Source: Macrostomum lignano (lineage: Eukaryota). Taken from it: 54,222 bases of DNA. Where the stretch lies: positions 1 to 54,222 of the forward strand of contig NIVC01004222.1 of the NCBI GenBank assembly GCA_002269645.1, given 5' to 3'. The translations under genes were made by a program, and so were the position numbers. Below, piece after piece: positions 27,601-52,695 of the stretch (positions are counted from its first letter, which is position 1; each line of letters begins with the position of its first letter). The notes below the pieces were generated by a model. The model worked only from the letters and a program-made list of their open reading frames with translations. It had not been told where the DNA came from and searched no databases.

Positions 27601-27997
27601 TTTTTCACAACTTGGACCAGCAAAATGTGTAAATTTGTTTTTTTTATCTAAAGAAGCTGCATTCCCCAATAAGGGACTTGTTTTCAAAAATGCGCACTGT
27701 TGTGCCCCATGAGCAGAGTGAGCAGTTTCAAAATAGTATTGCTGACGCAACCCCCTAATCTTATATTTACTTCAAGTAACATGTTAACCTGTTTACTTGT
27801 AAACCTGTTGTGGTGAGCCAACCACCAATTAGAAATAATGATAGGAAATCAATGCACTTTCTCGATGTGGCAGTATTTGATGCGTGCGCAGCGTTATTGC
27901 AGTTCTTGATCAATTTTTTTCATTTTTGTTGCTTCTTGACAACAGGAGGCGGTTGCTTCTGCCTGTTTCTTCAAATATTCTGTTTTCTTTGTTACAG

Positions 27998-30206
27998 CTG
28001 GAGCAGCTACCAGAGGAGCTGCTCACGCAGATCCTGTCCGAGCTGGACCAGACCAGCCTCGGCCGGTGCGCTCAGCTGAGCAGGCGCTGGCGGCGGCTCG
28101 CCACGCAGCCGCGGCTGTGGCGCAAAATCCGCATTGACGGCCGCACCGCAGATGCCGAGCTGATGGAGCGGCTCAGAGACTGGCTGGGCGGCAGCGTGCG
28201 GGAGATCTCAGCCTGGGGGCTGACAGCCGAGAACCGGCTGCCACTGCTGTTGTCTGCATCCGCCAGCCTCACCTGCCTCAGCCTGCGGGAGGTGCATGGC
28301 GACGCTGCGGTGACGGAGGAGGTGCCCCGGCCTGCTGGAGCTGAGCATCACCGACTGCCAGAAGTCGTTGTCGGCCGCCTCGCTGAGCAGCCTGCTGTCC
28401 GGCTGCCCGCGCCTCTCGCTGCTGGAAATTCTCGGCAGTGCCACTGACGCGTTTGCTGACTGGCAGGACCGTTCGGTGCGCCAGCTGTTCGTTGAGCTCA
28501 TCGGCCGCCTCACGGCGCTGCACCTGCCGGACATCGATGCTTCTGAGCTCCTTGCTGATCTGACAGAGTGTCCCCGGCTCTCCGTGTTGTCGGTGGGGCT
28601 GTCAGCCAGCCGCGGCTTCGGTCAGTGCCGCTAGTTTTTCACTGGGCTAGTATGCAGGAACCGCCGTTCCAATCCAATACAGTCACGCTCCTGGCACCCC
28701 CGTGCATGGGAATCTGCTTGAAGCCCCGGTGCTGCTTAGAAATGCATCAGAGCTGCTGAATTCCCCATCTCACAGCACGGGCCGCCCCACCTTTACTTTA
28801 AGGCATTTGTCTAGAAAAGCCTGTTCTAAAGACAACTCGAAAGATAAGAAGAACGGATATCTACTGGACTTCTTTGCGCTTGCCACTCTTCTATACTAGT
28901 GCTTACTCTAAATCCAATTCGATGGACTTGTGAAACCGCCCGGGACTCAACCCATACTGGATTTACTTTATCTTCTTAAGTTCAGACAGGCTTTCAAACA
29001 AATTTCCATAGAATTATTGAATAGCTTGACTGCCGGTGGTCCTTTATTCAATGCCCTCGCTGAACTCGCCACTCTCCAGAGTTGCCCCGCGTGCTGAGCA
29101 TCGCGCCGAACCTGACGGAGCTGCGAGTGACAAGTTGCGGCAACACCTTCGACCTCGAGCCCGACCGGCACCCTGCGCCCGTGCCCGGCCTGAGGCACCT
29201 GAGCCTTGACTGCGAGGGGTCACGTGACGAGAATACGGAGATAGCATTGTGGCTGCTGCCCAGCCTGCCCTCACTTGAGAGTCTGCGTTTGGTGTCTTAC
29301 CAAGCCTCAGAAAAGCACTTCCGCCAGATCCTCCGCTGCCTGCCTGCCGGCCTTGCGGACCTGAAGTTAAGATTCACGGAAATCGGTGCTCGTTCGGAGC
29401 TGGGCAGAGCGGTCCGCTGCCGCTAGGGCTTCAGCGGCTGCAGCTCACGGGGTCGTTCTTTGATGCGCCATGGAGCTTTCGGTTGTCTGGCGCTCTCAGC
29501 GGCTGTCCAGGTGAGTCCCGCTCACCTTGCCGCTCCTTTGGTAGATACCTGGATTGATGCTCAGACTGCTGCTCTCCCAGATGCTCAGACTGCTCCTCTC
29601 CCAGATGCCCAGACTGCTGCTCTCCCAGATGCTCAGACTGCTGACTGCTGTCCCAGATGCTCAGACTGCTGACTGCTGTCCCAGATGCTCAGACTGCTGC
29701 TCTCCAAGATGCTCAGACTGACTGCTCTCCCAGATGCTCACACTGACAGCTATAAATTCCATTTAACTGCAGCGTTGACCCATGTTGAGCTGGAGGCGGG
29801 CATTGACGACCTGCTGCCGGCTCTGCTCTCCCGGCTGTCCCACCTGCGCTGCCTCCACATCCACAACTGCAGCCTCCTGACTCGCCAGGCCTGGGCGAAT
29901 CTGCAAAGCCTCGCAGCCTGGCCACTCGATCTGATGGAGTTCCGGGCCCTCGGTTGCGCTGGCTCCAGCCTCACTGATGATGCGATGGCCGACCTGTGCG
30001 CCAGTCCGGTTGCCAGGGGACTGCGGCGGCTCCGCCTGTCCGACTGCAGCCAGTGGACTGCCGCCGCCCTCGCCAGCATCGCCAGCAGCTGTCTGTGGCT
30101 CACTGAGCTCCAGCTGGAGGGCTTCAGGCGAGTCCCCCGCGATGAGCGCATCGAGGCGGCCTTCGAGCTGAGCATCGACTTGACTGCTTTCTGGCTGCAA
30201 CCGTAG
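27998..30206 (+). pseudogene. F-box/LRR unit B (chimera: type II 5' end, type I body), disabled
   Basis: Exons 27998-28620, 29080-29510, 29773-30206. The 5' flank and F-box are identical to unit C; the body is nearly identical to unit A, including the -8 and +5 frameshifts. Confidence 0.85.
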
Positions 30207-30930
30207 CAACTCCCAGCTCTGCAACTGCCTCCCTTCAGCTCTGCAACTGCCTCCCTTCAGCTCTGCAACTGCCTCCCTTCAGCTCTGCAACTGCCTCCCT
30301 TCAGCTCTGCAACTGCCTCCCTTCAGCTCTGCAACTGCCTCCTTTCAGATCTGCAACTGCCTCCCTTCAGCTCTGCAACTGCCTCCCTTCAGCTCTGCAA
30401 CTGCCTTCCTTCAGCTCTGCAACTGCCTTCCTTCAGCTCTGCAACTGCCTCCCTTCAGCTCTGCAACTGCCTCCCTTCAGCTCTGCAACTGCCTCCCTTC
30501 AGCTCTGCAAGTGCCTCCCTTCAGCTCTGCAACTTTTTCACAACTTGGACCAGCAAAATGTGTAAATTTGTTTTTTTTATCTAAAGAAGCTGCATTCCCC
30601 AATAAGGGACTTGTTTTCAAAAATGCGCACTGTTGTGCCCCATGAGCAGAGTGAGCAGTTTCAAAATAGTATTGCTGACGCAACCCCCTAATCTTATATT
30701 TACTTCAAGTAACATGTTAACCTGTTTACTTGTAAACCTGTTGTGGTGAGCCAACCACCAATTAGAAATAATGATAGGAAATCAATGCACTTTCTCGATG
30801 TGGCAGTATTTGATGCGTGCGCAGCGTTATTGCAGTTCTTGATCAATTTTTTTCATTTTTGTTGCTTCTTGACAACAGGAGGCGGTTGCTTCTGCCTGTT
30901 TCTTCAAATATTCTGTTTTCTTTGTTACAG

Positions 30931-32748
30931 CTGGAGCAGCTACCAGAGGAGCTGCTCACGCAGATCCTGTCCGAGCTGGACCAGACCAGCCTCGGCCGGT
31001 GCGCTCAGCTGAGCAGGCGCTGGCGGCGGCTCGCCACGCAGCCGCGGCTGTGGCGCAAAATCCGCATTGACGGCCGCACCGCAGATGCCGAGCTGATGGA
31101 GCGGCTCAGAGACTGGCTGGGCGGCAGCGTGCGGGAGATCTCGGCCTGCGGGCTGACAGCCGAGCAGCGGCTGCCACTGCTTGTGGCCGCATCCGCCAGC
31201 CTCACCTGCCTCAGCCTGCGGGACATGGATCAACCACCCGCCCAGCTGGCCGTGACGGAGGCGGGCCGCAGCTGCCCCGGCCTGCTGGAGCTGCGCCTCG
31301 TTGATTGTCGAAACGGCCTGTCTGACGAGTCTCTAAGCTGCCTGCTGACCGGCTGCCCGCGCCTCTCGCTGCTGCAGATGGACAGCCGAACAGCCGCCTG
31401 CGATGCGGTCGGGTGGAGCTGCAGCCAGCAGCTGTTGGCTGAGCAGGTCTGCCGCCTCGCCAGCCTGTCAGTGAGAAGCTGGAGCAGCGCTGCTCCGATG
31501 CTCCGAGACCTGCCCGAGTGTCCGCTGCTCACCAGCTTCGCCACCTGCGGCGCTGAGCTGTCCAGTGAGTCTTTCAGGGGTTTCTGAGACCTGTTTGACG
31601 GACTTTACCTGAACTTCCATCGCTCCTAAAGATTTGCTGACTCCGCTGTCCCGGATGCCGGAGCTGACCGACCTGCGGCTTCGGTGCCGGAACTGGTGCC
31701 GCTCAGCAAGCGACCTGCAGCTGCTAGGCGGCGCGGCCCGGCTTCGCTGCCTCCGCATCGACAGCCGCTTTGTGGACGCCGCCTCGGTGCCTCCGCTGCT
31801 GGCCCGCATGCCGCAGCTGCGAAGCTTCCGGCTGAAGTCGTCAGCCAGGGTCTTCGTGTTGGACTGCCATGCCTGCGCGATCCTGCGAGCCCTGCCGGCG
31901 GGTCTGACAGACCTGGGCCTGAGCTTTGAGCACGCGGATTGGAGCTGCCGAGCCGGCGTCGGCCCACCTGCTGTGCTGCCGCCGAACCTGCGGCGGCTGC
32001 GGCTGGAGGGACTCCCGCCACGTGCGGATCAGCTGCGCCTGATGGAGCTGCTGGCCAGCTGCCCAGGTGAGCGGGTCTGTTGCTGGTGGCTGCTAAGGTG
32101 AGCGGGTCTGTTGCTGGTGGCTGCTAAGGTGAGCGGGTCTGTTGCTGGTGGCTGCTAAGGTGAGCGGGTCTGTTGCTGGTGGCTGCTAAGGTGAGCGGGT
32201 CTGTTGCTGGTGGCTGCTAAGGTGAGCGGGTCTGTTGCTGGTGTGGGCTGGTGGCTGCTCATGCATGTTAGGAACCAGTCATAACCTGCTCATATCTGCA
32301 GGCCTGACTTTTTTTAACCCTGGACTTCTGCACTGACGACCTGCTGCCGGCTCTGCTCTCCCGGCTGCCCCCCCTGCGCTGTCTCCACCTCACCGACTGC
32401 AGCCGCCTGACCCGCCAGGCCTGGGCGAATCTGCGACGTCTGCAGAGCCTCGGAGCTGCCACCCCCGACCTGCACGAGCTGCGTGCTCACAGGTGCAGCA
32501 GGCGCAGCCTCACTGATGAGGCGGTGGCCGACCTGTGCGCCAGTCCGGTTGCCAGGGGCCTGCGGCGCCTCAGCCTGTCATTTGACTGCAGCCAGCTGAC
32601 CGCCGCCTCGCTGGCCAGCATCGCCAGCGGCTGCCCGCTGCTGACCCGCCTGGTCCTGGCCGGGAGCGGCTTCGGGCAGGCCGACCTGCAGGCTTTCCGG
32701 CTGTCTTTTGAGCACTGCGTGACGGTGACGAATCACGGGCCCCTGTGA
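30931..32748 (+). CDS. F-box/LRR-repeat protein, unit C (type II)
   Basis: Exons 30931-31564, 31632-32066, 32302-32748 with GT-AG phase-1 introns. Open except for one extra T in a T7 run at about 32310 (possible sequencing error). No in-frame upstream ATG; it begins at a phase-0 acceptor TTACAG|CTG. Confidence 0.75.
32066..32242. repeat. 31-bp minisatellite carrying repeated donor motif AG|GTGAGC (unit C intron 2)
   Basis: About 6 copies of GGTGAGCGGGTCTGTTGCTGGTGGCTGCTAA starting at the true donor. Confidence 0.9.
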
Positions 32749-32891
32749 ACTCATTTTGTTAGCAACTTCTTCACCAGCTTGCCGGCTCCAATATGGCTGT
32801 TTTTATGATTCTATTGTTGGCACTGAGCTGCCGCTTCCTGGCTTTGCTGCTCATTTTACTCTGTAAAGCTCAGATTTTTAATTTGTAGCGA

Positions 32892-33035
32892 CAGTGGGCA
32901 GTGGGTGACTGATGAGGTGGGCAGTGGGTGACTGATGAGGTGGGCAGTGGGTGACTGATGAGGTGGGCAGTGGGTGACTGATGAGGTGGGCTGTGGGTGA
33001 CTGATGAGGTGGGTAGTGGGTGACTCATGAGGGTG
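32892..33035. repeat. 23-bp minisatellite between units C and D
   Basis: Tandem GTGGGCAGTGGGTGACTGATGAG. Confidence 0.9.
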
Positions 33036-33444
33036 ACTCGCAATCAAAATTTCATTATTCGTCACATTTTTTATGTAAACTGTCATTGCGGACTGCCTTT
33101 CAAGTCTCTGTTTTTTGTTGTTGAACTTTTTATCAATAAAATAAACTTGCTCAGAGTGTCCTATGAGAACAACAAAGATCCTGCATGTTTTTTTTTTATT
33201 CTCAGAGCAGGCGATGCTCGAAATTGTGTTTGATTTCCTGCTTTGAGCTCGCAGAGACTGGAGAGCAGCTTCACCATTTCAGCCGCACCATGGCGGAGGC
33301 CTGCGCGAGTCAAGAGCGTCCGGCGCCGAAGTCTCTGCGGCTGGAGGCGGCTGAGGCGGCCGGTGAAGACGAGCGGGAGACCTAGGAGTCCGCGCTGAGT
33401 GTGAGCTGCGACCTGATGTGGGACCTGGGCTGAGTGTGAGCTGA

Positions 33445-34618
33445 GTGAAGCTTCCAGTCCCATCCTGAAGCTCCAGTCCCATCCTGAAGCTTCCAGTCCC
33501 ATCCTGAAGCTTCCAGTCCCATTATGAAGCTTCCAGTCCCATCCTGAAGCTTCCAGTCCCATCCTGAAGCTCCAGTCCCATCCTGAAGCTTCCAGTCCCA
33601 TCCTGAAGCTCCAGTCCCATCCTGAAGCTTCCAGTCCCATATTGAAATTTCAGTCCCATCCTGAAGCTTCCAGTCCCATCCTGAAGCTTCCAGTCCCATC
33701 TTGAAGCTTCCAGTCCCATATTGAAATTCCAGTCCCATATTGAAATTCCAGTCCCATCCTGAAGCTCCAGTCCCATCCTGAAGCTTCCAGTCCCATCCTG
33801 AAGCTCCAGTCCCATCCTGAAGCTTCCAGTCCTATATTGAAATTTCAGTCCCATCCTGAAGCTTCCAGTCCCATCTTGAAGCTTCCAATCCCAACCTGAA
33901 GCTCCAGCACCCATATTGAAATTCCAGTCCCATCCTGAAGCTCCAGTCCCATCCTGAAGCTCCAGTCCCATCCTGAAGCTCCAGTCCCATCCTGAAGCTC
34001 CAGTCCCATCCTGAAGCTCCAGTCCCATCCTGAAGCTCCAGTCCCATCCTGAAGCTCCAGTCCCATCCTGAAGCTCCAGTCCCATCCTGAAGCTCCAGTC
34101 CCATCCTGAAGCTCCAGCACCCATATTGAAATTCCAGTCCCATCCTGAAGCTTCCAGTCCCATCCTGAAGCTCCAGTCCCATCCTGAAGCTTCCAGTCCC
34201 ATCCTGAAGCTCCAGTCCCATCCTGAAGCTTCCAGTCCCATCCTGAAGCTCCAGTCCCATCCTGAAGCTTCCAGTCCCATCCTGAAGCTCCAGTCCCATC
34301 CTGAAGCTTCCAGTCCTATATTGAAATTTCAGTCCCATCCTGAAGCTTCCAGTCCCATCTTGAAGCTTCCAATCCCAACCTGAAGCTCCAGCACCCATAT
34401 TGAAATTCCAGTCCCATCCTGAAGCTCCAGTCCCATCCTGAAGCTCCAGTCCCATCCTGAAGCTCCAGTCCCATCCTGAAGCTCCAGTCCCATCCTGAAG
34501 CTCCAGTCCCATCCTGAAGCTCCAGTCCCATCCTGAAGCTCCAGTCCCATCCTGAAGCTCCAGTCCCATCCTGAAGCTCCAGTCCCATCCTGAAGCTCCA
34601 GTCCCATCCTGAAGCCGA
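33445..34618. repeat. 19/20-bp minisatellite (CTCCAGTCCCATCCTGAAG)
   Basis: About 1.17-kb tandem array with an internally duplicated block of variant units. Confidence 0.95.
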
Positions 34619-35064
34619 AGCTGTTGGTCTCCTCATTCACAAGAACTGCGCGAGCTGCTGCGTCGGCTGCCCCGCCTGTCCGAGCTGACGATGAACCAGA
34701 AATTTTCGGACAGCCTGGCCGCTGTGCTGGCAGACGGCTGCGGCGGCCGCCTCCACTCCCGTGCCGGTTCCTGGTGCATGAAGCTGAGCGGCCCTGCTCG
34801 ACCGTAGCCCGCTGCTCTGGCGGCTACGGCTGACCTCCTGCAGTGCGCTGGACGCCGCGGGCTGCCGCCTGGTTGTCTCCCGCCTGTCGCAGGGCCTTCA
34901 GGAGCTGGAGCTGAAGGATGCGCTGTGTGACGGCCTGGACAGAGCGCTGCCGCTGAGTCTGCGCCTGCTGCAGCTGGCCGGCCACCCCTGCAGCAAAACT
35001 ACAAAACTGCAGCTGACCGGCCTGAGTGCCTGCTCGGGTGAGCTGCCTGAGCTCGGGAGGCGAT

Positions 35065-35345
35065 TGGGATTGGGGATGAGAGCTTGGGGAGATGAGAGCT
35101 TGGGGAGATGAGATGTTGGAGAGATGAGAGGTTGGGGAGATGAGATGTTTTGGAGATGAGAGAGGTTGGGGAGATGAGAGGTGGGGGAGATAAGAGGTTG
35201 GGAAGATGAGGTTGGGGAGATGAGAGGTTGGGGAGATGAGAAGTTGGGAAGATGAGAAGTTGGGGAAATGAGAGGTTGGAGGAGATGAGAGGTTGGGGTA
35301 GATGAGAGGTTGGAGAGATGGGAGAGCTTGGGGAGATGAGACAAA
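35065..35345. repeat. 16-bp purine-rich minisatellite in unit D intron
   Basis: Tandem GAGAGGTTGGGGAGAT. Confidence 0.9.
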
Positions 35346-35897
35346 TAGGTCCTTTCAAGGCACTATCAGTGTGTGTGTCGAAGCCGCCCATTTTGCAACC
35401 CTCGCCCGCAGCCCAGCTGACCGTCCTGGCTTTCGGAGGCTGCAACGACGAGCTGCTGCCGGCTCTGCTCTCCCGGCTGCCCCGCCTTCGCCGCCTCCAG
35501 CTCTACGACTGCGGCCGCCTGACCCGCCAGGCCTGGGCGAACCTGCGAGACCTTCGGAGCCTCGGAGCTGCCATGCCCGACCCGCACGAGTTCTGGGCCA
35601 TCTGCTGCAGGAAGTCCGTGCTCACGGAGAGAGGCGGTGGCCGACCTGTGCGCCAGTCCGGTCGCCAGGGGCCTGCGGCGGCTCAGCCTGTCAAAATGCG
35701 ACCGGCTGACCGCCGCCTCTGTCGCCAGCATCGCCAGAGGCTGCCCGTGGCTGCTCAACCTGGATCTCTGCGGCTTCGACTGCATCGCCAGAGACGAGCG
35801 CCTCGAGGCGGCCTTCGGGCAGCGGGTGAACCTCAGCGGCTTGTGGAGGTCGGAGACGGCAGCTCTGGCGGAGGACGGCTGTGAAGTGGAAACTGGC

Positions 35898-36802
35898 AGT
35901 GACAGTGACAGTGACAGTGACAGTGACTGATTGGCTGTGACAGTGACTGAGTGGTTGTGACAGTGACTGAGTGGTTGTGACAGTGACAGTGACTGATTGG
36001 CTGTGACAGTGACTGATTGGCTGACAGTGACTGATTGGCTGTGACAGTGACTGATTGGCTGTGACAGTGACTGATTGGCTGACAGTGACTGATTGGCTGT
36101 GACAGTGACAGTGACAGTGACAGTGACTGATTGGCTGTGACAGTGACTGAGTGGTTGTGACAGTGACTGAGTGGTTGTGACAGTGACAGTGACTGATTGG
36201 CTGTGACAGTGACTGATTGGCTGACAGTGACTGATTGGCTGTGACAGTGACTGATTGGCTGTGACAGTGACTGATTGGCTGTGACAGTGACTGATTGGCT
36301 GTGACAGTGACTGATTGGCTGTGACAGTGACTGATTGGCTGTGACAGTGACTGATTGGCTGTGACAGTGACTGATTGGCTGTGACAGTGACTGATTGGCT
36401 GTGACAGTGACTGATTGGCTGTGACAGTGACTGATTGGCTGTGACAGTGACTGATTGGCTGTGACAGTGACTGATTGGCTGTGACAGTGACTGATTGGCT
36501 GTGACAGTGACTGATTGGCTGTGACAGTGACTGATTGGCTGTGACAGTGACTGATTGGCTGTGACAGTGACTGATTGGCTGTGACAGTGACTGATTGGCT
36601 GTGACAGTGACTGATTGGCTGTGACAGTGACTGATTGGCTGTGACAGTGACTGATTGGCTGTGACAGTGACTGATTGGCTGTGACAGTGACTGATTGGCT
36701 GTGACAGTGACTGATTGGCTGTGACAGTGACTGATTGGCTGTGACAGTGACTGATTGGCTGTGACAGTGACTGATTGGCTGTGACAGTGACTGATTGGCT
36801 GT
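35898..36802. repeat. (GACAGT)n seeding a 20-bp minisatellite (GTGACAGTGACTGATTGGCT)
   Basis: It starts inside the last codons of unit D (SDSDSDSD*) and becomes a perfectly homogeneous 20-mer array. Confidence 0.95.
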
Positions 36803-36992
36803 GCAAAAATATTTTCTATACGCAGAAATCTCTATCAAACAAAAAATCTTGGCTTGTAGAAGAATCTTTATGCTAAATATACTCAGTGCCTTACTGACTT
36901 ATTTCTTCACGTTAGAAATTTTTTATCTGCACCAAATCGTTGGGTTGATTTAGCGACATCTTGACTTTTATTTCTAAGGAGCACTGCTGACT

Positions 36993-37715
36993 GAGAAGCA
37001 AATGTCACTGAAGGAGAAGCAAATGTCACTGAAACAGAAGCAAATGTCACTGAAGGAGAAGCAAATGTCACTGAAGGAGAAGCAAATGTCACTGAAACAG
37101 AAGCAAATGTCACTGAAAGAGAAGCAAAAGTCACTGAAGGAGAAGCAAATGTCACTGAAACAGAAGCAAATGTCACTGAAAGAGAAGCAAAAGTCACTGA
37201 AGGAGAAGCAAATGTCACTGAAGGAGAAGCAAATGTCACTGAAGGAGAAGCAAATGTCACTGAAGGAGAAGCAAATGTCACTGAATGGAAAACAAATATC
37301 ACTGAAGGAGAAGCAAATGTCACTGAATGGAAAGCAAAAGTCACTGAAGGAGAAGAAAATGTCACTGAAAGAGAAGCAAATGTCACTGAAAGAGAAGCAA
37401 AAGTCACTGAAGGAGAAGCAAATGTCACTGAAGGAGAAGCAAATGTCACTGAAGGAGAAGCAAATGTCACTGAAACAGAAGCAAATGTCACTGAAAGAGA
37501 AGCAAAAGTCACTGAAGGAGAAGCAAATGTCACTGAAGGAGAAGCAAATGTCACTGAAGGAGAAGCAAATGTCACTGAAGGAGAAGCAAATGTCACTGAA
37601 GGAGAAGCAAATGTCACTGAAACAGAAGCAAATGTCACTGAAAGAGAAGCAAAAGTCACTGAAGGAGAAGCAAATGTCACTGAAGGAGAAGCAAATGTCA
37701 CTGAAGGAGAAGCTT
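36993..37715. repeat. 21-bp minisatellite (GAGAAGCAAATGTCACTGAAG)
   Basis: About 34 copies. Two plus frames (KQMSLKE, ANVTEGE) and one minus frame are stop-free. Confidence 0.95.
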
Positions 37716-38402
37716 TAGCACCAAAGGGGCGCCATCACCAAGGGCGCCATCACCAAGGGGCGCCACAGCTGCAGTAAAGAGGTTTTTGAGCCCACTTGCC
37801 AATCTCTTCCTGGCTATGCCCCTGTTATGCGGTACGAACATGTACATGTAGTAGTATGTAGGAAAGATACTTCAGAAGCAGATTTAAGTAAGGCTGAATC
37901 TATGAGCAAATTGTAAGTTGTTGCTATTCAAACCCACTTAGCAAGACTAAGCGCTGACGCAGACCCTTCTCGGGATACATGGATAATCTCGCTCTCTGTA
38001 GCGCTTAGGACAGGGAATTGGTGAGGTGATAAAGGCGAAAGCAGACAATTGACGAAGCAGCTGGGGCGCAAGCAGGCACGAACTCCCCCAAACGCCAAAG
38101 AAAAGAAATACAGACAGGGCGAAAGGGCATCTTTTAGGCAAGAGTGAAAAATGCACAGTTGAACAAAGAAACGTGAAAAACAAACAAGACAAAATTGCTC
38201 AAAACCGCTCGAAACGCAATGTCAGAGCCTAAATGGGCACGCAAGCAAATACACCGATTACGTCACTCCTCCAATGGCCGATGCGCTGGATCTCCTCGAC
38301 GGCAGGCCTGATCGGTGGGCCCACGTCCTCTGCGTAAGCCATCGGCAGACAAAGAACCCGTTCGGGAGCCTGCCGCCGCCGCCAAGAGCGCTTCAAGAAG
38401 AC

Positions 38403-38560
38403 GTTGAATCCTGGATGCTGACAGAATCATCGCCGGCTCGCCGTTGAATCCGGATGCTGACAGAATCATCTGAATCCGGATGCTGACAAAATCATCGCCG
38501 GCTCGCCGTTGAACCCGGATGCTGACAGAATCATCTGAATCCGGATGCTGACAGAATCAT
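38403..38560. repeat. Compound short tandem repeat (GAATCCGGATGCTGACAGAATCATC +/- GCCGGCTCGCCGTT)
   Basis: About 5 copies visible. Confidence 0.8.
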
Positions 38561-43926: not shown

Positions 43927-44539
43927 TGTAACTAATAAAGAGAAAAATCCCATGGATAAGTTAGTGTGAAAGTCATTTGCTCTTCTTGATTAGATCTCTA
44001 AGAAAGATTGAATGCTATGAGATATTTTTAAAAACAAATATTAGTGACCTATCTCAGCTCCCTAAGCAGGTACACAATTCATTTTTACACTTTTTCAACA
44101 TAGTCCCCTCCAATTTTGATGCAATTTTTGCAAGGATCTATCAACTTTCTAAAAGCCAAGACAAAGGCTTCTGCTAGGAGACTTCTCATAACCTATTGTG
44201 ACTCATTTTTTGACTGAGTTTCTAGCAAGCTAGACTAGATGCCTGATAACTCTTTTTACTTTAGGAGAGGCAGAAGTCTGTAGAAGCCAGATCTGGCAAG
44301 TATGGCAGATAAGAAAGTACATGGGTTAAATATCTCTCTAGAAAACTCCTCATGTTTTCTATTGAATAAATAGGTTCGTTATCCCAATGAAAAATCATTG
44401 CTGCTTAGTCAGGCCATCAGGCCAAGATTATTATAGAGGATCAAGTGGACAGTGTTAATAAAATGGCTGAATTTAGTTGCTAATTCCTCAACTATCACAC
44501 AATGGACCAATTTCACTATAGTCTAAATAACAGCACAGA

Positions 44540-44961
44540 GTGTTGCCGACTCTTTGCTCGGCTGCCAAACCTGCGCTGCCTGTTGATGTCCAGAGTCTCG
44601 GAGCTCCCCTAGCTGACCTGCAGAGTCTCGGAGCTCCCCTAGCTGACCTGCAGAGTCTCAGAGCTCCCCTAGCTGACCTGCAGAGTCTCAGAGCTGGGGG
44701 GGGGGGGTTTCACTAGGCCGAAATTTCACTTTGCCGAAAGCATCTTCCTTCACAAGGCCGAAACTTCATTAGGCAAAAATGTCACTTTGCCGAAAAATCA
44801 TTTTAGCAACCTCTTTCACTAGGCCAAAACTAACAAAATTAATTTAATTAACTTGATTACGTCTCCATGTACGATCCAGATCCAGACCAGCAGCCGATTT
44901 CACAGTAGCATAAATGTAAAACTGTAAATTGGCACTATCTATCTATCTATCTATCTATCTC

Positions 44962-45022
<61 letters not shown>

Positions 45023-45442
45023 TTGTCTATCTATTTTGGAGGCTTAAGTTCACATCCCCTTTAGACCATAGTAAGGATGCTGCTAAAATGATTTTTTGGC
45101 AAAGTGAAGTTTCGGCCTAGTGAAGTTTCGGCCTTATGAAAGAGCGTGCTAGTAATTTCTGCAATGTAAAGTTTCGGCCTAGTGAAGTTTCGGCCTAGTG
45201 AAAAAGAGTGTTTTTCGGCGAAGTGAAATTTCGGTCTAATGAAAGCGCCCCAGGGCCCCGGGGCGCAGCTCCCCTAGCTGCGCCAGTCCGGTTGCTATAG
45301 GCCTGCGGCGGCCGAGTGCGGCCGAGTGACCGCCGCCTCCCTGGCCAGCATCGCCGACGGCTGCCTGCGGTTTGCTGAACTGACGCTATACCACTTCAAG
45401 GCGGCCTTCGAGCTGAGGAGCATCGACTTGTCCGCGTGCTGA
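44540..45442 (+). pseudogene. Relic of F-box/LRR exon 3 (unit E), interrupted by a 30-bp repeat and a MITE
   Basis: Remnants LPTL.ARLPNLRCL (about 44545) and CASPVAIGLRR..VTAASLASIADGC..FKAAFELRSIDLSAC* (about 45278-45442) match exon 3 of the other units. Confidence 0.75.
44696..45266. mobile_element. MITE with subterminal GCCGAAA/TTCACT repeats, containing (TATC)n
   Basis: Inverted TTTCACTAGGCCGAAATTTCACTTTGCCGAAA vs TTTCGGCGAAGTGAAATTTCGGTCTAATGAAA. AGCT on both flanks (44692-44695, 45267-45270). (TATC)n at about 44935-45022. Confidence 0.7.
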
Positions 45443-45489
45443 CTGTGGCCTTGGCTGCTCGCTTTTTAATGAACTTCGGTGTGCAGCGA

Positions 45490-46100
45490 AGTAGACCAGC
45501 AGGCATGACTGTGGCCTCTGTAAATTTCATTAGATAGATGCAGTAGATAGCAGACAGACATGCTGACAGACTGACAGACTAACAGACAGACAGCAAACAG
45601 ACAGACAGACAGACGACAGACAGACACAAACAGACAGATACACAGACAGAGACAGACAGACAGACAGACGGGCAGGCGGGGAGACAGACAGACAGACAAA
45701 CAGACAGATACACAGACAGAGACAGACAGACAGACAGACGGGCAGGCAGGGAGACAGGCAGACAGACACTAGATAAATATACAGTAATAAGTCACACAGC
45801 ATGACTGTGGCCTCTGTAAATTTCATTAGATAGATGCAGTAGATAGCAGACAGACATGCTGACAGACTGACAGACAGACAGCAAACAGACAGACAGACAC
45901 AAACAGACAGATACACAGACAGAGACAGACAGACGGGCAGGCAGGGAGACAGACAGACAAACAAACAGACAGAGACAGACAGACAGACAGACGGGCAGGC
46001 AGGGAGACAGGCAGACAGACAAACAGACAGACGGGCAGGCAGACAGACAAACAGGCAGACAGACGGGCAGGCTGGGAGGCAGACACTAGATAAATAAACA
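45490..46100. repeat. Compound (AGAC)n microsatellite within a ~300-bp duplicated unit
   Basis: CATGACTGTGGCCTCTGTAAATTTCATTAGATAG occurs at about 45503 and 45799, each followed by AGAC runs. Confidence 0.85.
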
Positions 46101-46498
46101 GATTACAAGCCAACCATTTCGTTGCGTGACTCCAAAGCAACCAGGCGGCAGGTAGTCAGAGCAGTCGTCTCCACCATGAAGGCCCGCAAGCCTGGGAGTT
46201 GTGCATGTTGATGCGCAGTGAAGCGAGCACCAGGGGAAATAACAGTTATATACAGTATAGTTTTCATTTTCAGTCATTTGTTTTTTGTCTCTCTACCTCC
46301 AGTGTTCGGAGCTCTGAATGAAATCACTGAATTGCAGTTTTTGCAGGTATTAAATATATCGCTGTGCGCTGTGGATATAATTCTAGCATATCCCACCCTT
46401 GCAAATGAATTGGTAATTTTGCATTATAAAATGCAGAGCACTTTGTAGAGATAAATGCTTCAATGACTGACTGCCTTTGCCACTTCCCAGCTTTACAG

Positions 46499-49489
46499 AT
46501 GGCTCATTCTGTGACCTTCGATCTGGAGGCTCCGGTCCGGAAACGCCTGCAAATGGAGGCGGCTGGAGAATTCGAACCCGGCAGCTCTCCGTTTCACCTG
46601 GAGCAGCTGCCAGAAGAGCTGCTCACGCAGATCCTGTCCGAGCTGGACCAGACCAGCCTCGGCCGGTGCGCTCAGCTGAGCAGGCGGTGGTGGCAGCTCG
46701 CCACACAGCCGCAGCTGTGGCGCAAAATCCACATTGACGGCCGCACCGCAGATGCCGAGCTGATGGAGCGGCTCAGAGACTGGCTGGGCAACAGCGTGCA
46801 GGAGATCTCGGCCTCCTTCCTCCCTCGGCTGCCGCTGCTTCTGGTCGCATCCGCCAGCCTCACCTGTCTCAGCCTGTGGCACGCTAAAGGAGACACTGCA
46901 GTGACCGTGGCTGCCTGCTTCTGCCGCAACCTGCGGGAGCTTCGCCTTTGCGGCTGCAACAGCGCGCTGTCGGCCGCCTCACTGAGCTGCCTGCTGTCCG
47001 ACTGCCCGCGCCTCTCGCTGCTGGAAACTGACAGCGATGAAGCGTTCGATGAATGGCGGCACTTTCAGGTGCGCCAGCCGTTCGTTGAGCTCGTCGGCCG
47101 CCTCTCGGCACTGTACCTGCCGTTCATCGAGGCTTTGGAGCTCCTTGATAATCTGGCAGAGTGTCCCCGGCTCTCCGTGTTGTCGATGGGCTGTCTGCCA
47201 GCCGCGGCGGTCACTGCGGTATGTTTTCACTGGGCTTTTTGTATGCAGGGACCGCCGTTCCAATCCAATGCAGGCACCTGCTTGAAGCCATGAGCTTCTT
47301 AAAAATGCATCAGCGCTGCTGAATTCCCCATCTCAGCTCCCCAGCTAAAGGCTTTGCAGTCTAGAAAAATCTGTTCTTAAGACAACTTAACTTCTTTGCG
47401 CTTGCCACTCTTCTGCATTAGTGCTTATTCTGAATCCTAGTCGATAAATTTTTGAAACCACCCAGGACTCAACTCAACCCATACTGGCTGTACTTTATCT
47501 TCTTAAGTTCAGACATGCTTTAAACAAATTTCCATAGAATTATTGAATTGCTTGACGGTCGGCGGTTCTTCATTGAATGCCCTCGCTGAACTCGCCGCCC
47601 TCCAGAGTTGCCCCGCGTGCTGAGCATCGCGCCGAACCTGACAGAGCTGCGAGTGGAAATTTGCGGCGGGAACTTCGATCTCAGGACCGACCAGCCGCCT
47701 GCGCCCGTTCCCAGGCTGAAACACCTGAGCCTTGACTGGAACTGGTCATATGGCGAGAATACTAAGATAGCATTGTGGCTGCTGCCCAGCCTGCCCTCGC
47801 TTGAGAGCCTCGATTTAGTGTTTTCCGAAGTCTCAGATGAGCAATTCCGCCAGATCCTCCGCTGCCTGACTGCCGGCCTTGCGGACCTTCGAGTGGAGAT
47901 TCACGGAAGTCGGTGCTCGTTCGGAGCTGAGCTGGGCGGTCCGCTGCCGCCGGGGCTTCAGCAGCTGCAGCTCACAGGATCATTATTTGATGATCCATGG
48001 AGTTTACAGTTGTCTGACACTCTGAGTGGCTGTCCAGGTGAGTCCCGCTCACCCTGCCGCTCACCCTGCCGCTCACCCTGCGCTCACCCTACATACTCGG
48101 ATTGATGCTCAGACTGCTGCTCTCCCAGATGCTCAGACTGCTGCTCTCCCAGATGCTCAGACTGCTGCTCTCCCAGATGGTCAGACTGCTGCTCTCCCAG
48201 ATGCTCAGACTGCTGCTCTCCCAGATGCTCAGACTGCTGCTCTCCAGATGCTCAGACTGCTGCTCTCCCAGATGGTCAGACTGCTGCTCTCCCAGATGCT
48301 CAGACTGCTGCTCTCCCAGATGCTCAGACTGCTGCTCTCCCAGATGCTCAGACTGCTGCTCTCCCAGATGGTCAGACTGCTGCTCTCCCAGATGCTCAGA
48401 CTGCTGCTCTCCCAGATGCTCAGACTGCTGCTCTCCCAGATGCTCAGACTGCTGCTCTCCCAGATGCTCAGACTGCTGCTCTCCCAGATGCTCAGACTGC
48501 TGCTCTCCCAGATGCTCAGACTGCTGCTCTCCCAGATGCTCAGACTGCTGCTCTACCAGATGCTCAGACTGCTCTCCCAGATGCTCAGACTGCTGCTCTC
48601 CCAGATGCTCAGACTGCTGCTCTCCCAGATGCTCAGACTGCTGCTCTCCCAGATGCTCAGACTGCTGCTCTCCCAGATGCTCAGACTGCTGCTCTCCCAG
48701 ATGCTCAGACTGCTGCTCTCCCAGATGCTCAGACTGCTGCTCTCCCAGATGCTCAGACTGCTGCTCTCCCAGATGCTCAGACTGCTGCTCTCCCAGATGC
48801 TCAGACTGCTGCTCTCCCAGATGCTCAGACTGCTGCTCTCCCAGATGCTCAGACTGCTGCTCTCCCAGATGCTCAGACTGCTGCTCTACCAGATGCTCAG
48901 ACTGCTGCTCTCCCAGATGCTCAGACTGCTGCTCTCCCAGATGCTCAGACTGCTGCTCTCCCAGATGCTCAGACTGCTGCTCTCCAGATGCTCAGACTGC
49001 TGTTCTCCCAGATGCTCAGACTTGCTCAGCTGCTATAAATTCCATTCAACTGCAGAGTTGACCTATGTTGAGCTGGAGGCGGGCACCGACGACCTGCTGG
49101 CGGCTCTGCTCTCCCGGCTGCCGCGCCTGCGCTGCCTCTGCATCAACAACTGCAGCCTCCTGACCCGCCAGGCCTGGGCGAATCTGCGAAGCCTCGCAGC
49201 CTGGCCACTCGATCTGATGGAGTTCCGGGCCCTCGATTGCACTGGCTTCAGCCTCACTGATGAGGCGGTGGCCGACCTGTGCGTCAGTCCGGTCGCCAGA
49301 GGCCTGCGGTGGCTCCACCTGTCCGACTGCAGCCAGCTGACTGCCGTCGCCCTCGCCAGCATCGCCAGCGGCTGTCCGTGGCTCACTGAGCTCCAGCTGG
49401 AGGGCTTCAGGCGAGTCCCCCGCGATGAGGGCATCGAGGCGGCCTTTGAGCTGAGCATCGACTTGACTGCTTGCTGGCTGCAACCGTAG
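46499..49489 (+). CDS. F-box/LRR-repeat protein, unit F (type I), ~528 aa
   Basis: Exons 46499-47218, 47606-48037, 49056-49489. The gene is fully open if one G is restored in the GGG run at about 47188 (unit B has GGGG there). Acceptor TTTACAG|ATG; donors GTATGT and GTGAGT. Confidence 0.8.
48105..49020. repeat. Expanded 24-bp minisatellite in unit F intron 2
   Basis: Roughly 38 copies of CCCAGATGCTCAGACTGCTGCTCT. Confidence 0.95.
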
Positions 49490-49809
49490 CAACTTTCATC
49501 TCTGCAACTGCCTCCCCTCAGCTCTGCAACTGCCTCCCTTCAGCTCTGCAACTGCCTCCCTTCAGCTCTGCAACTGCCTCCCTTCAGCTCTGCAACTGTC
49601 TCCCTTCGGCTCTGCAACTGTCTCCCTTCAGCTGTGCAGCCGTCTCCCTTCAGCTCTGCAACTGCCTCCCTTCAGCTCTGCAACTGCCTCCCTTCAGCTG
49701 CAACTGCCTCCCTTCATCTCTGCATCTGACTCCCTTCAGCTCTTCAACTGACTCACTTCGGCTTTGCATCTCTCATTCAGAGAAGAAGGAAAATGTTCAA
49801 CTCAGTGGG

Positions 49810-50141
49810 TTTTTTTTATTAGAGGCAGGGTCAGGCGCACTTTAAGCGACATACAGGTAGGCACACAATCGGCGAGAGGCATTACTGCCCATTCCGCCGA
49901 CTCCCCTGAGCAGGCATACAAGCGCGCGGATACGTACGCAGGCACACACTCACACAGGAGTGTACAGCGGCCCTAACTTTATTTTATCGTTACACATGTA
50001 CACTTTACTGCGTCTCGGGGGTTGGCTCTCAAGGCCGTTAATTGCACGAGCAGAGCCAAGCCGAGATTGCAATTCAGCCCCAAATTAATGTGACTGCACT
50101 TGGAATCGAGCCTGGGTCGCTGGCATACCAGAGCCTGCGCT
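49810..50141 (-). mobile_element. tRNA-derived SINE family 1, second copy
   Basis: Colinear and highly similar to 11236-11595, from the A-tail to the B-box region; the extreme 5' end is diverged. Confidence 0.85.
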
Positions 50142-50494
50142 AGACCGCCCAGAGAAACTAAATTCCTAGACAAGAGACTAGTCCCTCAAAAATCTGCTGT
50201 TGCGCCTTTGAGCAGTTTTCAAGTAACACTCCTACACGTATTACTGACTCATTCCCTAACATCTGATGATTACTTCAAGTACCATGTATCCTGTTATCCT
50301 GTTAGCCTGTAAAGCCAGCGGACAGCCAGGTTAAAAATAAATGCATTTTCTGGATTAGCCAGTGTTGGTGCCTGCACCGTATGCTGGGCTGTGTTGCTGC
50401 AGTTTTGAACCATTGTTCAATTTTGTTGCTTCTTGACAACAGGAGGCAGTCGCTTCTGTCTGTTTCTTCAAATATTCTGTTTTCTTTCTTACAG

Positions 50495-52695
50495 CTGGAG
50501 CAACTGCCAGAGGAGCTGCTCACGCAGATCCTGTCCGAGCTGGACCAGACCAGCCTCGGCCGGTGCGCTCAGCTGAGCAGGCGCTGGCGGCGGCTCGCCA
50601 CGCAGCCGCGACTGTGGTGCAAAATCCACATTGAAGGGTGCACCGCAGATGCCGAGCTGATGGAGCGGCTCAGAGACTGGCTGGGCGGCAGCGTGCGGGA
50701 GATCTCGGCCTGCGGGCTGACAGCCGAGCAGCGGCTGCCACTGCTGTTGGCCGCATCCGCCAGCCTCACCTGCCTGAGCCTGCGGGAGGTTCACGGCGAC
50801 GCTGAGGTGACGGAGGCGGGCCGCAGCTGCCCCGGCCTGCTGGAGCTGCGCCTCACCGACTGCCAGAAGTCGCTGTCGGCCGCCTCGCTGAGCAGCCTCC
50901 TTTCCGGCTGCCCGCGCCTCTCGCTGCTGGAATTCAGCGACAAGGGGGTCCTCAGCGACTGGTGGGACCCGGACTTTCGCTGGCTGCTCTTTGATCTGAT
51001 TGGCCGCCTCAGCAGCCTCAGCATATCTCTTGATGAAGCTGCGGAACTCATCAGCGAGCTGCCTGAATGCCCGCTGCTGCTCAGCCTGTCTGTTTACCAG
51101 CTCAGCCTGCCTGGTGAGTCCCCAGCCTGCCGATCCTGAGGGTCTCAGCTCGCGAGCCCCGCACCTCTCCGCCCATCTGCACCCAGAGCTGCAGACGGTG
51201 TTGAGCAGCGCCCGGAACCTGACCGACCTGCATGTTGAGACGCTCAGCAGCCAGGATGAAGCCGCCATGCTGAACTTCCCGCCCTTCCCCAGCCTGCGGC
51301 GGCTCAGCATCGGCGGCGGCCCGCCTGGCGGTCGAGTCCGAGTCCCCGAGATGTTGCTGGAGCTGCTGCCCAGCCTCCCGGCACTCAGCAGCTTCAGCAC
51401 CGTCTCGTCCGGCTTACTCGGCGAGGACTTCCGCCGTATCGTCCGCTGCCTGCCCGGCGACCTGGCGGACCTTCGGCTGCACTTTCTGGAGCAGCTGGCA
51501 GTGGATGAGGCCGAGGTGAGCGGCCCGCTGCCTTTGAGCCTGCGGCGTCTGCAGCTCACTGGGTCCGCCTTTGACACCGGCTGGGTCCTGCGGCAGACAG
51601 ATCCGCTGTCAGGCTGCTCAGGTGAGTCAAGAGGATGCTCATTCTTTGTGCAGGTGTCACTCACGTTGCTCACACTGCTCACATTCTCCTCTCTGCAGGC
51701 CTGACCCACCTCACTCTCTGCAGGCCTGACCCACCTCACTCTCTGCAGGCCTGACATACCTCACTCTCTGCAGACCTGACCCACCCCACTCTGCAGACAT
51801 GACCCACCTCACCCCCTCTGCAAGCCTGACCTACCTCACTCCCCGCTGCAAGCCTGACCCACTCACTCTCTGCAGGCCTGACCCACCTCACTCCCCCTCT
51901 GCAGGCCTGACCCACCTCACTCCCCGCTGCAAGCCTGACCCACCTCACTCCCCCTCTGCAAGCCTGACCCACCTCACTCCCCGCTGCAAGCCTGACCCAC
52001 TCACTCTGCAGGCCTGACCCACCTCACTCCCCCTCTGCAGGCCTGACCCACCTCACTCTCTGCAGGCCTGACCCACCTCACTCCCCACTGCAGGCCTGAC
52101 CCACCTCGCTCCCCACTGCAGGCCTGACCCACCTCACTCCCCTCTGCAGGCCTGACCCACCTCACTCCCCACTGCAGGCCTGACCCACCTCACTCCTTTC
52201 TGCAGCACTGACCCACCTCTCTCCTTTCTGCAGGCCTGACCCACCTCGCTCTCCAAGCGTGCAGCGATGACCACCTGCTGCCGGCTCTGCTCTCCGGCTG
52301 CCCCGCCTGCGCTGCCTTCGCTTCTTCGACTGCAGCCGCCTGACCCGCCAGGCCTGGGCGAACCTCCGAGACCTGCAGGGCCTCGCCGCCTCCTCATCCG
52401 ACTGCACGAGCTCCAGGCTCACCAGTGCGCCTATTCCAGCCTTACCGATGACGCGGTGGCCGACCTGTGCGCCAGTCCGGTTGCCAGGCGACTTCGGCGG
52501 CTGCTTTTGTCGTCTGAGCTCAGCAGTCAGCTGACGGCCGCCTCGCTGGCCAGCATCGCCAGCGGCTGCCCGCTGCTGACCCGCCTGAACCTCCGGTGGC
52601 GCTCCTGCGCTGACGAAGCTGAAGACCTTCGGGCTGCCTTCGAGCAGAGCGTTGAGCTGAACGGTGGCTGGTCTGAGGACGAGTTTCCCTGGTGA
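50495..52695 (+). CDS. F-box/LRR-repeat protein, unit G (type II)
   Basis: Exons 50495-51113, 51187-51621, 52234-52695 with phase-1 GT-AG introns. Exon 3 needs two single-C restorations (about 52293 and 52402). It starts at acceptor TTACAG|CTG; an unspliced in-frame ATG also exists at 50381. Confidence 0.75.
51692..52250 (+). repeat. ~25-28-bp minisatellite made of the duplicated intron/exon junction CTGCAG|GCCTGACCCACCTCA
   Basis: About 20 tandem copies of the unit G exon-3 acceptor plus the first codons. Confidence 0.9.

What the first reader, a model, noticed from the sequence alone, without database searches (positions are those of the whole stretch)
27998..50500. Type II genes start at a phase-0 acceptor directly on the F-box: spliced-leader AUG initiation and a possible operon
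Seen: B (27998), C (30931) and G (50495) have a U-rich tract + TTACAG immediately followed by CTG GAG CAG (LEQLPEELL). In B and C the frame hits TGA upstream with no ATG. The only nearby donor-like site (27810/30743) is phase-incompatible with the preceding ATG and is absent in G. The first downstream ATG lies beyond the F-box. Types I (TTTACAG|ATG) and III (CAG|CCGCACCATG) also begin at acceptors, and B, C, D and G each begin within about 1 kb of the previous unit's stop. Known: flatworm spliced leaders end in AUG, which can act as initiator Met, and SL trans-splicing resolves polycistronic transcripts. Inference: SL addition gives M-LEQLPEELL..., and the cluster may be an F-box operon. Caveat: G has an alternative unspliced in-frame ATG at 50381.
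Basis: partly seen in the sequence, partly recalled or inferred. Interest (0 to 1): 0.8.

Follow-up and report, generated by a model that had tools for sequence, protein, structure and literature searches.

The report
Flatworm F-box genes lacking start codons
A cluster of duplicated flatworm F-box genes contains copies whose coding sequence begins exactly at a splice acceptor with no start codon, probably because the start is supplied by the AUG of the trans-spliced leader RNA, a mechanism already known in flatworms, so this is an untested new example and not a new principle.

Summary
At 27998, 30931 and 50495 a U-rich tract plus TTACAG is followed directly by CTG GAG CAR (LEQLPEELL). That residue is position 1 of the Pfam F-box profile. 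No conserved, phase-compatible ATG exon lies upstream.

The three cases are not independent. B's 400 nt upstream region is identical to C's, and B is a recent chimera carrying A's frameshifts. Only C and G are separate witnesses.

The closest proteins are Macrostomum lignano F-box proteins. Published Macrostomum spliced leaders end in ATG, and the published trans-acceptor motif [T/C]TNCAG fits all seven 5' junctions. C and G have no nonsense codons in about 504 codons despite about 25-30% divergence, so they needed a start codon. SL-AUG initiation is the best explanation (about 0.5).

No RNA evidence could be obtained. As assembled, every type II copy has a frame disruption: an 8-nt deletion in B, and single-base indels in C and G. 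Only type I gene F is intact. A M. lignano relative uses a cis-spliced ATG exon.

The operon idea passes only the lenient 1 kb spacing criterion. SL-AUG initiation has been documented in flatworms since 2006, so this is at most a new member of a known kind.

The parts
25034..27248 (+). Unit A. Type I F-box/LRR copy (TTTACAG|ATG, then 33 codons, then the F-box). Pseudogene.
   Evidence: It has an 11-nt deletion in the F-box (at 25227), an 8-nt deletion shared with B (at 25436) and a 125-nt deletion relative to B.
27998..30206 (+). Unit B. Type II head on an A-like body. A recent chimera and a pseudogene.
   Evidence: Its 400 nt upstream are 100% identical to C's. Its exon 1 is 95.5% identical to A's. 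It has the 8-nt deletion at 28312 and a second frameshift in exon 2.
30931..32748 (+). Unit C. Type II gene with exons 30931-31564, 31632-32066 and 32302-32748. The ORF is open except for one extra T in the T7 run at 32309-32315.
   Evidence: Removing one T gives a clean 504-aa F-box/LRR protein. Pfam F-box-like covers residues 1-46.
30841..30930 (+). Conserved non-coding block directly upstream of the type II acceptor (the putative outron 3' end): U-rich tract plus TTACAG. The same block lies at 27908-27997 and 50405-50494.
   Evidence: C versus G identity is 85.6% over -90..-1, about 94% in the last 70 nt, and 54.7% over -350..-91. It matches [T/C]TNCAG.
33283..35930 (+). Unit D. Type III: acceptor, 7 nt, ATG (CACCATGG), a 24-codon exon, a phase-1 donor GCCG|GTGAAG, and an intron filled by a 19-nt tandem array. 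It has no F-box, and its LRR exons carry a 1-nt insertion. Probably a pseudogene.
46499..49489 (+). Unit F. Type I gene with exons 46499-47218, 47608-48037 and 49056-49489. The only fully intact copy (527 aa).
   Evidence: Pfam F-box-like 34-79, LRR_At5g56370 and LRR_4, all above their cut-offs.
50495..52695 (+). Unit G. Type II gene with exons 50495-51113, 51187-51621 and 52234-52695. Two 1-nt deletions in exon 3, near 52295 and 52401.
   Evidence: Adding one C at each site gives a clean 505-aa ORF that ends at the stop codon.
54133..54222 (+). Unit H. Type III 5' exon, cut off by the end of the window.
   Evidence: 92% identical to D's 5' region (33192-33370). Sequence read.
50381..50494 (+). 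G-only upstream in-frame ATG. Unspliced translation would add 38 non-conserved hydrophobic codons.
   Evidence: B and C have TGA in this frame.
27813..27818 (+). Donor-like GTGAGC, also at 30746. It is in phase 2 relative to ATG 27781 and is absent in G.
50336..50341 (+). AATAAA 159 nt upstream of G's acceptor. Similar hexamers lie at 33135/33140 (143-148 nt before D) and at 53968-53982 (156-165 nt before H). They could be poly(A) signals of the upstream gene or TATA-like elements.
   Evidence: No such hexamer occurs in the A-B or B-C spacers.
49495..50142 (.). Repeats that inflate the F-G spacer: a 22-nt tandem array (49495-49768) and a tRNA-derived SINE-like element (49810-50142). The same 22-nt array lies at 27256-27601 and 30214-30534.

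Best explanation
The region is a birth-and-death cluster of fast-evolving F-box/LRR (FBXL-like) genes from a macrostomid-type flatworm.

The cluster arose by segmental duplication of a three-gene unit, type I - type II - type III. F-G-H corresponds to A-C-D. B was added later by unequal crossing-over, with a C-like head on an A-like body.

Type II genes have no genomic start codon. Their first coding exon begins at F-box residue 1, directly behind a U-rich tract and a TTACAG acceptor with no conserved partner donor upstream.

The most likely expression route has two inferred steps. First, the acceptor receives the spliced leader in trans. Second, the leader's 3'-terminal AUG, which is then in phase 0, starts translation and gives M-LEQLPEELL...

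For type I the same AUG is in frame and redundant (MM...). For type III it is out of frame.

What is shown: the anatomy, the phase, the lack of a cis ATG exon, and past selection on the reading frames. What is inferred: trans-splicing at these sites and use of the SL AUG.

Co-transcription of neighbouring units as a polycistron is possible (about 0.35) but is not required. Several units (A, B, D) are dead copies.
For: 1. The junction coordinates, the phase and the upstream stop codons are exact.
2. Pfam F-box-like profile positions 1-46 align to residues 1-46 of type II. The first in-frame Met is residue 55, so any downstream start deletes the F-box.
3. The best database relatives are M. lignano F-box proteins. 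Two of them begin M-EQLPVELL and M-EKILPDELL.
4. The M. lignano SL is CGGTCTCTTACTGCGAAGACTCAATTTATTGCATG. Its trans-acceptor motif is [T/C]TNCAG. An unpaired acceptor is sufficient for trans-splicing (PMC8629364). The SLs of M. cliftonense and M. hystrix are conserved, including the terminal ATG (PMC10468722).
5. All seven 5' junctions match the motif, and types I and II share TTACAG. Three of the six inferred internal cis acceptors do not match it.
6. No phase-0 ATG...GT exon is conserved in the spacers. The 300 nt upstream carry 4-6 ATGs that trans-splicing would remove.
7. C and G show no nonsense codon in about 504 codons each, at about 25-30% divergence. In simulation, P(no stop) is 0.004 per lineage at 15% neutral change. 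Each needs only one or two single-base corrections to read through.
8. The type II upstream region is homologous between C and G over about 350 nt, so the architecture predates their split.
9. Precedent: more than 40 S. mansoni cDNAs require the SL AUG, and the same is reported for E. granulosus (PMC9851317, PMC3510090).
Against: - There are no RNA data. No near-identical protein or transcript exists in the searched collections, and look-ups for P0002 and P0003 failed.
- As assembled, every type II copy has a frame disruption. Only type I gene F is intact.
- dN/dS outside the F-box is 0.7-0.9, which indicates weak constraint.
- The block from -90 to +270 is near-identical between C and G. This may be recent gene conversion, so the start region could be younger than the gene bodies.
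- M. lignano locus L001 supplies its ATG from a cis-spliced 5' exon, followed by a 510-nt intron before the F-box exon.
- Type I and type III share a homologous ATG-bearing 5' module that type II lacks. This fits a 5' truncation.
- B and C have donor-like GTGAGC sites 185 and 280 nt upstream.
- The source species is inferred, not identified. The window contains no SL RNA gene.
Confidence: 0.5

Rival explanations
1. Type II units are 5'-truncated, non-functional or decaying duplicates. Under this reading the TTACAG acceptor is the relic cis acceptor of an ancestral first intron. The ATG-bearing 5' exon, still present in types I and III, was lost at a duplication or deletion breakpoint.
For: - All three type II copies carry frame disruptions as assembled.
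- A, B and D are clear pseudogenes.
- The M. lignano relative L001 has an ATG exon, a 510-nt intron, then the F-box exon.
- The type I N-terminus and type III exon 1 are homologous 5' modules that type II lacks.
- dN/dS is 0.7-0.9 outside the F-box.
Against: - C and G have no nonsense codon in about 504 codons each despite about 25-30% divergence. The simulated probability is 0.004 per lineage.
- Their only defects are one and two single-base indels in short homopolymers, which could be assembly errors.
- The type II head has persisted since before the C/G split.
- The type III donor is phase 1 and cannot join the phase-0 type II acceptor in frame.
Confidence: 0.25
2. A cis-spliced 5' exon supplies the 5' end. 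It could be coding, such as the 3-codon ATG AGC AGA|GTGAGC exon of B and C. It could also be non-coding, with translation then starting at the CUG or at Met55.
For: - The phase-0 mini-exon at 27709/30642 has a GTGAGC donor.
- A further GTGAGC lies at 27813/30746.
- Flatworm acceptors are often shared between cis- and trans-splicing (PMC12582326).
Against: - Neither donor nor its ATG exists in G.
- The second donor is phase-incompatible.
- A start at Met55 removes the entire F-box, which is the best conserved part of the protein (dN/dS 0.3).
Confidence: 0.12
3. The cluster is an SL-resolved operon. The polycistrons would be A-B-C-D and F-G-H, each headed by a type I gene.
For: - All units lie on one strand.
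- Repeat-adjusted spacers are about 380-400 nt, below the 1 kb criterion used for M. lignano (PMC8629364).
- AATAAA lies 143-165 nt upstream of the D, G and H acceptors.
- Every unit starts at an acceptor.
Against: - The spacers are not at the ~100 bp mode of M. lignano operons.
- No AATAAA precedes B or C.
- The AT-rich hexamers could equally be TATA-like promoter elements.
- Half of the units are pseudogenes.
- There is no RNA evidence.
Confidence: 0.35

Closest known systems
SL-AUG-initiated mRNAs of flatworms (Cheng et al. 2006, J Biol Chem 281:733; cited in PMC9851317, PMC3510090, PMC12582326, PMC7653826)
   Same: The recipient gene has no start codon of its own. The acceptor is in phase with the ORF. 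A conserved N-terminal domain is complete only if the SL's terminal AUG is used.
   Different: Those cases were shown with cDNAs and reporter assays in parasitic flatworms. This case is inferred from DNA alone. It concerns a free-living macrostomid-type genome, a lineage-specific multigene family, and copies that may be decaying.
Macrostomum lignano SL trans-splicing and operons (Ustyantsev & Berezikov 2021, PMC8629364)
   Same: The acceptor motif [T/C]TNCAG fits. The units are same-strand neighbours less than 1 kb apart after subtracting repeats, and repeats inflate the spacers.
   Different: In M. lignano, trans-spliced genes are enriched for conserved genes, and the operon spacing mode is about 100 bp. 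Here the genes are non-conserved paralogues spaced about 400 nt apart.
M. lignano F-box gene BOX15_Mlig030928g3 (P0001; locus L001, NIVC01001673)
   Same: The F-box/LRR architecture is the same. The F-box DNA is about 92% identical. The same 31-nt tandem repeat sits in the intron before the last exon.
   Different: It has its own ATG in a separate 5' exon, cis-spliced in phase 0. The acceptor lies 10 codons upstream of the F-box.
Tandem, rapidly evolving F-box gene families, for example in Caenorhabditis and plants (own knowledge, not tested here)
   Same: Tandem arrays, frequent pseudogenes, a conserved F-box and a fast-evolving substrate-binding part.
   Different: Those families have ordinary genomic start codons.

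Membership tests
SL-AUG-initiated trans-spliced mRNA (flatworm slORF) | The organism has an SL RNA whose exon ends in AUG. | not testable with these tools
   The window has no SL RNA gene. The species is inferred only from its best hits, which are M. lignano proteins. Published Macrostomum SLs end in ATG.
SL-AUG-initiated trans-spliced mRNA (flatworm slORF) | [quoted passage not shown] | tested here: met
   U-rich tract plus TTACAG, matching [T/C]TNCAG. No donor is conserved between B/C and G. B and C do carry non-conserved GTGAGC sites.
SL-AUG-initiated trans-spliced mRNA (flatworm slORF) | The acceptor is in phase 0 with the main ORF, and no genomic in-frame AUG can give the full conserved N-terminus. 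| tested here: met
   Adding the SL ATG gives MLEQLPEELL. The first genomic Met is residue 55. G's ATG at 50381 is not conserved.
SL-AUG-initiated trans-spliced mRNA (flatworm slORF) | SL-containing cDNA or reads at the junction, and translation from the SL AUG. | not testable with these tools
   No transcript of this family from the source species is in the searchable collections.
SL-resolved operon | Same-strand neighbours with short intercistronic spacers. | tested here: inconclusive
   Raw spacers are 534-1437 nt, and about 380-400 nt after subtracting repeats. This is below the 1 kb criterion but not near the 100 bp mode.
SL-resolved operon | A polycistronic precursor RNA, with the upstream gene's 3'-end formation shortly before the downstream acceptor. 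| not testable with these tools
   The only evidence is AATAAA hexamers 143-165 nt upstream of three of the five acceptors.
F-box/LRR protein (SCF substrate receptor type) | An F-box domain followed by leucine-rich repeats. | tested here: met
   PF12937 scores 51-56 bits (cut-off 24.3). PF00646 scores 31-41 bits (cut-off 20.5). PF24758 LRR scores 33-35 bits (cut-off 27). Skp1 binding was not tested.
Pseudogene / dead duplicate | A reading frame broken by frameshifts or stop codons. | tested here: met
   Met for A, B and D. For C and G there are only single-base indels in an otherwise open frame, so the result is inconclusive.

The most novel reading that the evidence does not exclude
In a free-living flatworm lineage, a family of fast-evolving F-box receptors has permanently handed its start codon to the spliced leader. 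The protein would begin exactly at the F-box. The paralogues would be co-transcribed as an operon of related genes headed by a type I copy. The unusually strong nucleotide-level conservation spanning the acceptor and the F-box would be a functional RNA element and not a product of gene conversion. That conservation covers -90 to +270 and holds even against M. lignano.
Probability: 0.12. Interest if true: 0.55.

Novelty: new member of a known kind. Interest (0 to 1): 0.33.

Why it matters
**Annotation.** If true, these genes would be missed or mis-annotated by gene finders that require a genomic ATG. An N-terminal extension from 50381 might be invented, or the F-box dropped by starting at Met55. 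The Macrostomum genome paper handled this problem by leaving the SL's ATG on the reads.

**Evolution.** It would also give a clean example, from a free-living flatworm, of how an in-frame SL AUG can make a genomic start codon dispensable.

**Limits.** It would not change the understanding of trans-splicing. The mechanism has been established in flatworms since 2006.

Tried and rejected
1. Rfam and ARAGORN scans of the window, and searches for the M. lignano SL sequence, found nothing. The window has no SL RNA gene and no SL-bearing retrocopy.
2. I looked for direct transcript evidence. The protein search found only three M. lignano relatives at 42-47% identity and no near-identical sequence. 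Contig look-ups for P0002 and P0003 failed.
3. A MAFFT alignment hinted that the type II upstream region is a degraded type I acceptor plus ATG (CAGATGACTCATTCTGT aligned to CAAATATTCTGT). I rejected this because local alignment scores did not exceed shuffles (z <= 1.5).
4. I considered that type III exon 1, or a type I 5' module, might be cis-spliced to type II F-box exons. I rejected this because the type III donor is phase 1 and type I has GGAGAA where type III has GGTGAA.
5. Species identification through the RCOR-like gene failed. The best hits were vertebrate RCOR at 51-60% identity, with no M. lignano hit. The window is probably not M. lignano itself.
6. The long antisense ORF at 50489-51757 has no Pfam match. 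I treated it as a by-product of GC-rich sequence.
7. Nucleotide-level gap counts in exon 2 were unreliable at 48-57% identity. I relied on frame continuity of the translations instead.

Full report
**1. The observation**

The three junctions are exactly as described. At 27998 (B), 30931 (C) and 50495 (G) the sequence reads ...aaatattctgttttctttSttacag|CTG GAG CAR CTR CCA GAG GAG CTG CTC.

- In B and C the frame runs back to a TGA with no ATG. The ORF list gives only GTG starts at 27884 and 30817.
- G has an in-frame ATG at 50381. B and C have a stop codon in the corresponding stretch.
- Type I (A 25034, F 46499) is TTTACAG|ATG followed by 33 codons and then the F-box.
- Type III (D 33283, H 54133) is CAG|CCGCACCATGG.
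- Pfam places position 1 of its F-box-like profile on residue 1 of the type II translation. In type I it falls on residue 34.
- The first in-frame Met of type II is residue 55, beyond the domain.
- Strong acceptor-like sites are rare on the + strand. There are 21 in 54 kb, and 12 of them lie in one tandem array. Three of the five F-box starts coincide with such a site, which is not chance.

**2. How many independent cases**

A self-comparison shows that the cluster is a segmental duplication of a triplet, type I - type II - type III. F-G-H corresponds to A-C-D.

B is a later product of unequal crossing-over.
- Its 400 nt upstream are 100% identical to C's.
- Its exon 1 is 95.5% identical to A's and shares A's 8-nt deletion.

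The "three" type II starts are therefore one ancestral feature kept in two diverged lineages, C and G.

The C/G homology extends about 350 nt upstream of the acceptor. The type II head is thus as old as their split.

**3. What the genes are**

The best database relatives are three Macrostomum lignano F-box proteins at 42-47% identity.

Spliced models give three-exon genes of about 505-527 aa. Each has an F-box and leucine-rich repeats.

| Unit | Type | State as assembled |
|---|---|---|
| F | I | Fully intact, 527 aa |
| A | I | 11-, 8- and 125-nt deletions |
| B | II | The 8-nt deletion plus a second frameshift |
| D | III | No F-box, and a 1-nt insertion |
| C | II | Open except for one extra T in a T7 run at the start of exon 3 |
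| G | II | Open except for two single-base deletions in exon 3 |

Correcting the single bases in C and G restores clean 504- and 505-aa ORFs that end at the expected stop codons.

These single-base indels could be real recent lesions. They could also be assembly errors in a repeated region. I cannot tell which.

**4. Were type II genes ever functional?**

C, G and F differ from one another by about 25-30% at the nucleotide level. dS is about 0.35-0.45, and dN/dS is 0.3 in the F-box and 0.7-0.9 elsewhere.

Even so, C and G contain no nonsense codon in about 504 codons. In a simulation with 15% neutral substitutions per lineage, only 0.4% of sequences stay free of stop codons.

The frames were therefore maintained by selection for most of the time since the split, while the protein sequence changed quickly. 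That pattern fits a diversifying substrate-receptor family. A translated gene needs a start codon.

**5. Where could the start come from?**

I enumerated every ATG...GT exon in the spacers.
- The only phase-0 candidate is a 3-codon exon, ATG AGC AGA|GTGAGC at 27709/30642. G lacks it.
- The GTGAGC at 27813/30746 is in phase 2.
- The type III 5' exon has a phase-1 donor and cannot join the phase-0 acceptor in frame.
- Type I has no donor at the equivalent place. It reads GGAGAA where type III reads GGTGAA.

What remains is the spliced leader. The literature supports this route.
- The M. lignano SL ends in ...TTGCATG.
- The motif enriched at its trans-splice acceptors is [T/C]TNCAG.
- An unpaired 5' acceptor is sufficient for trans-splicing (PMC8629364).
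- The SLs of M. cliftonense and M. hystrix are conserved, including the terminal ATG. The authors of that genome paper regard it as a start codon (PMC10468722).

All seven 5' junctions of the cluster fit the motif, and types I and II share TTACAG.

Joining ATG to each junction gives these results:
- Type II: MLEQLPEELL...
- Type I: MMAHS..., in frame and redundant.
- Type III: a 24-codon out-of-frame uORF that overlaps the genomic CACCATGG start.

**6. What argues against it**

- There is no RNA evidence of any kind.
- Every type II copy is frame-disrupted as assembled.
- The only relative whose DNA I could read is M. lignano locus L001. It has its own ATG in a 5' exon (ATGATGGCC...CAGGAT|gtaaga) and a 510-nt intron before the F-box exon.
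- The type I N-terminus and type III exon 1 are homologous ATG-bearing modules (z = 4-6 against shuffles, at similar offsets from the acceptor). Type II therefore looks like a copy that lost this module.
- The block from -90 to +270 around the acceptor is 86-96% identical between C and G, while the flanks are 55-61% identical. If this is gene conversion, the present start region could be young.

Together these points support the rival reading of 5'-truncated, decaying duplicates whose acceptor is a relic cis acceptor. I give that rival 0.25, mainly because of the missing stop codons described in section 4.

**7. The operon idea**

Raw spacers are 749, 724, 534, 1005 and 1437 nt. Subtracting the tandem arrays and a SINE-like insert leaves about 380-400 nt in each.

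That passes the lenient 1 kb repeat-adjusted criterion used for M. lignano. It is not at the ~100 bp mode.

AATAAA lies 143-165 nt upstream of the D, G and H acceptors and is absent before B and C. These AT-rich hexamers could be poly(A) signals of the upstream gene, or TATA-like elements of the downstream one.

The idea is permitted but not supported. I give it about 0.35.

**8. Comparison with what is known, and novelty**

Initiation from the SL's terminal AUG was shown in flatworms in 2006. [quoted passage not shown] Similar findings exist for E. granulosus and tapeworms.

This locus would be a further example, in a macrostomid-type free-living flatworm and in a lineage-specific F-box family. 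It is therefore a new member of a known kind, and an untested one.

Its practical value is for annotation, because ATG-dependent gene finders will mis-call these genes.

**9. Verdict**

SL-AUG initiation is the best single explanation (about 0.5) but is not demonstrated.
- The operon is speculative.
- Interest is 0.33.

Noticed in passing
window 30931-31200, 50495-50764 and 46598-46827; L001 10594-10720: The F-box coding DNA is far more conserved than the rest of the gene. C versus G identity is 96.3% over +1..+270 and 61.3% over +271..+634. Against the M. lignano gene, 33 of 36 identical residues in the F-box use the identical codon, compared with 35 of 63 elsewhere (Fisher p = 1.3e-4). This could be gene conversion or a nucleotide-level constraint, and it is unexplained.
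   Followed up: partly
window 46499-46597 / 25034-25132 versus 33283-33364 / 54133-54222: The type I N-terminal 33 codons and type III exon 1 are homologous 5' modules. They share a TGGAGGCGGCTG core at +55 and +59 from their acceptors (z = 4-6). The type III donor GGTGAA corresponds to GGAGAA in type I. This suggests type I arose by loss or exonisation of a first intron.
   Followed up: partly
window 49810-50142 and 11236-11574: An 87%-identical dispersed repeat whose end resembles the 3' half of a tRNA on the minus strand (a SINE-like element). One copy sits in the F-G spacer. ARAGORN and Rfam did not call it.
   Followed up: no
window 200-3700, minus strand: A REST-corepressor (RCOR/CoREST)-like gene with ELM2 and SANT/Myb exons. 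Its best hits are vertebrate RCOR at 51-60% identity, and no M. lignano hit was returned.
   Followed up: partly
L001 16726-16746 (M. lignano NIVC01001673): A fragment with one mismatch to the core of the M. lignano spliced leader, not followed by a GT donor. It lies between the F-box gene and a 55-nt F-box relic at 17225-17279. It may be a retrocopy of a trans-spliced mRNA or an SL pseudogene.
   Followed up: no
window 26551-26787, 29556-29745, 32058-32243, 33446-34615, 48104-49022, 51686-52251 and 52815-53875; L001 13733-15354: Almost every second intron and 3' spacer of the cluster holds its own tandem array, with units of 24, 31, 19, 28, 22 and 46 nt. The 31-nt unit of C's intron 2 is also present, at 77-79% identity, in the matching intron of the M. 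lignano gene.
   Followed up: no
window 46303-46345: A strong acceptor-like site (...ctctctacctccag|) lies 196 nt upstream of F's ATG acceptor. It is followed 43 nt later by a donor-like GCAG|GTATTA. F may therefore have a short non-coding 5' exon, in which case its TTTACAG|ATG would be a cis acceptor.
   Followed up: no
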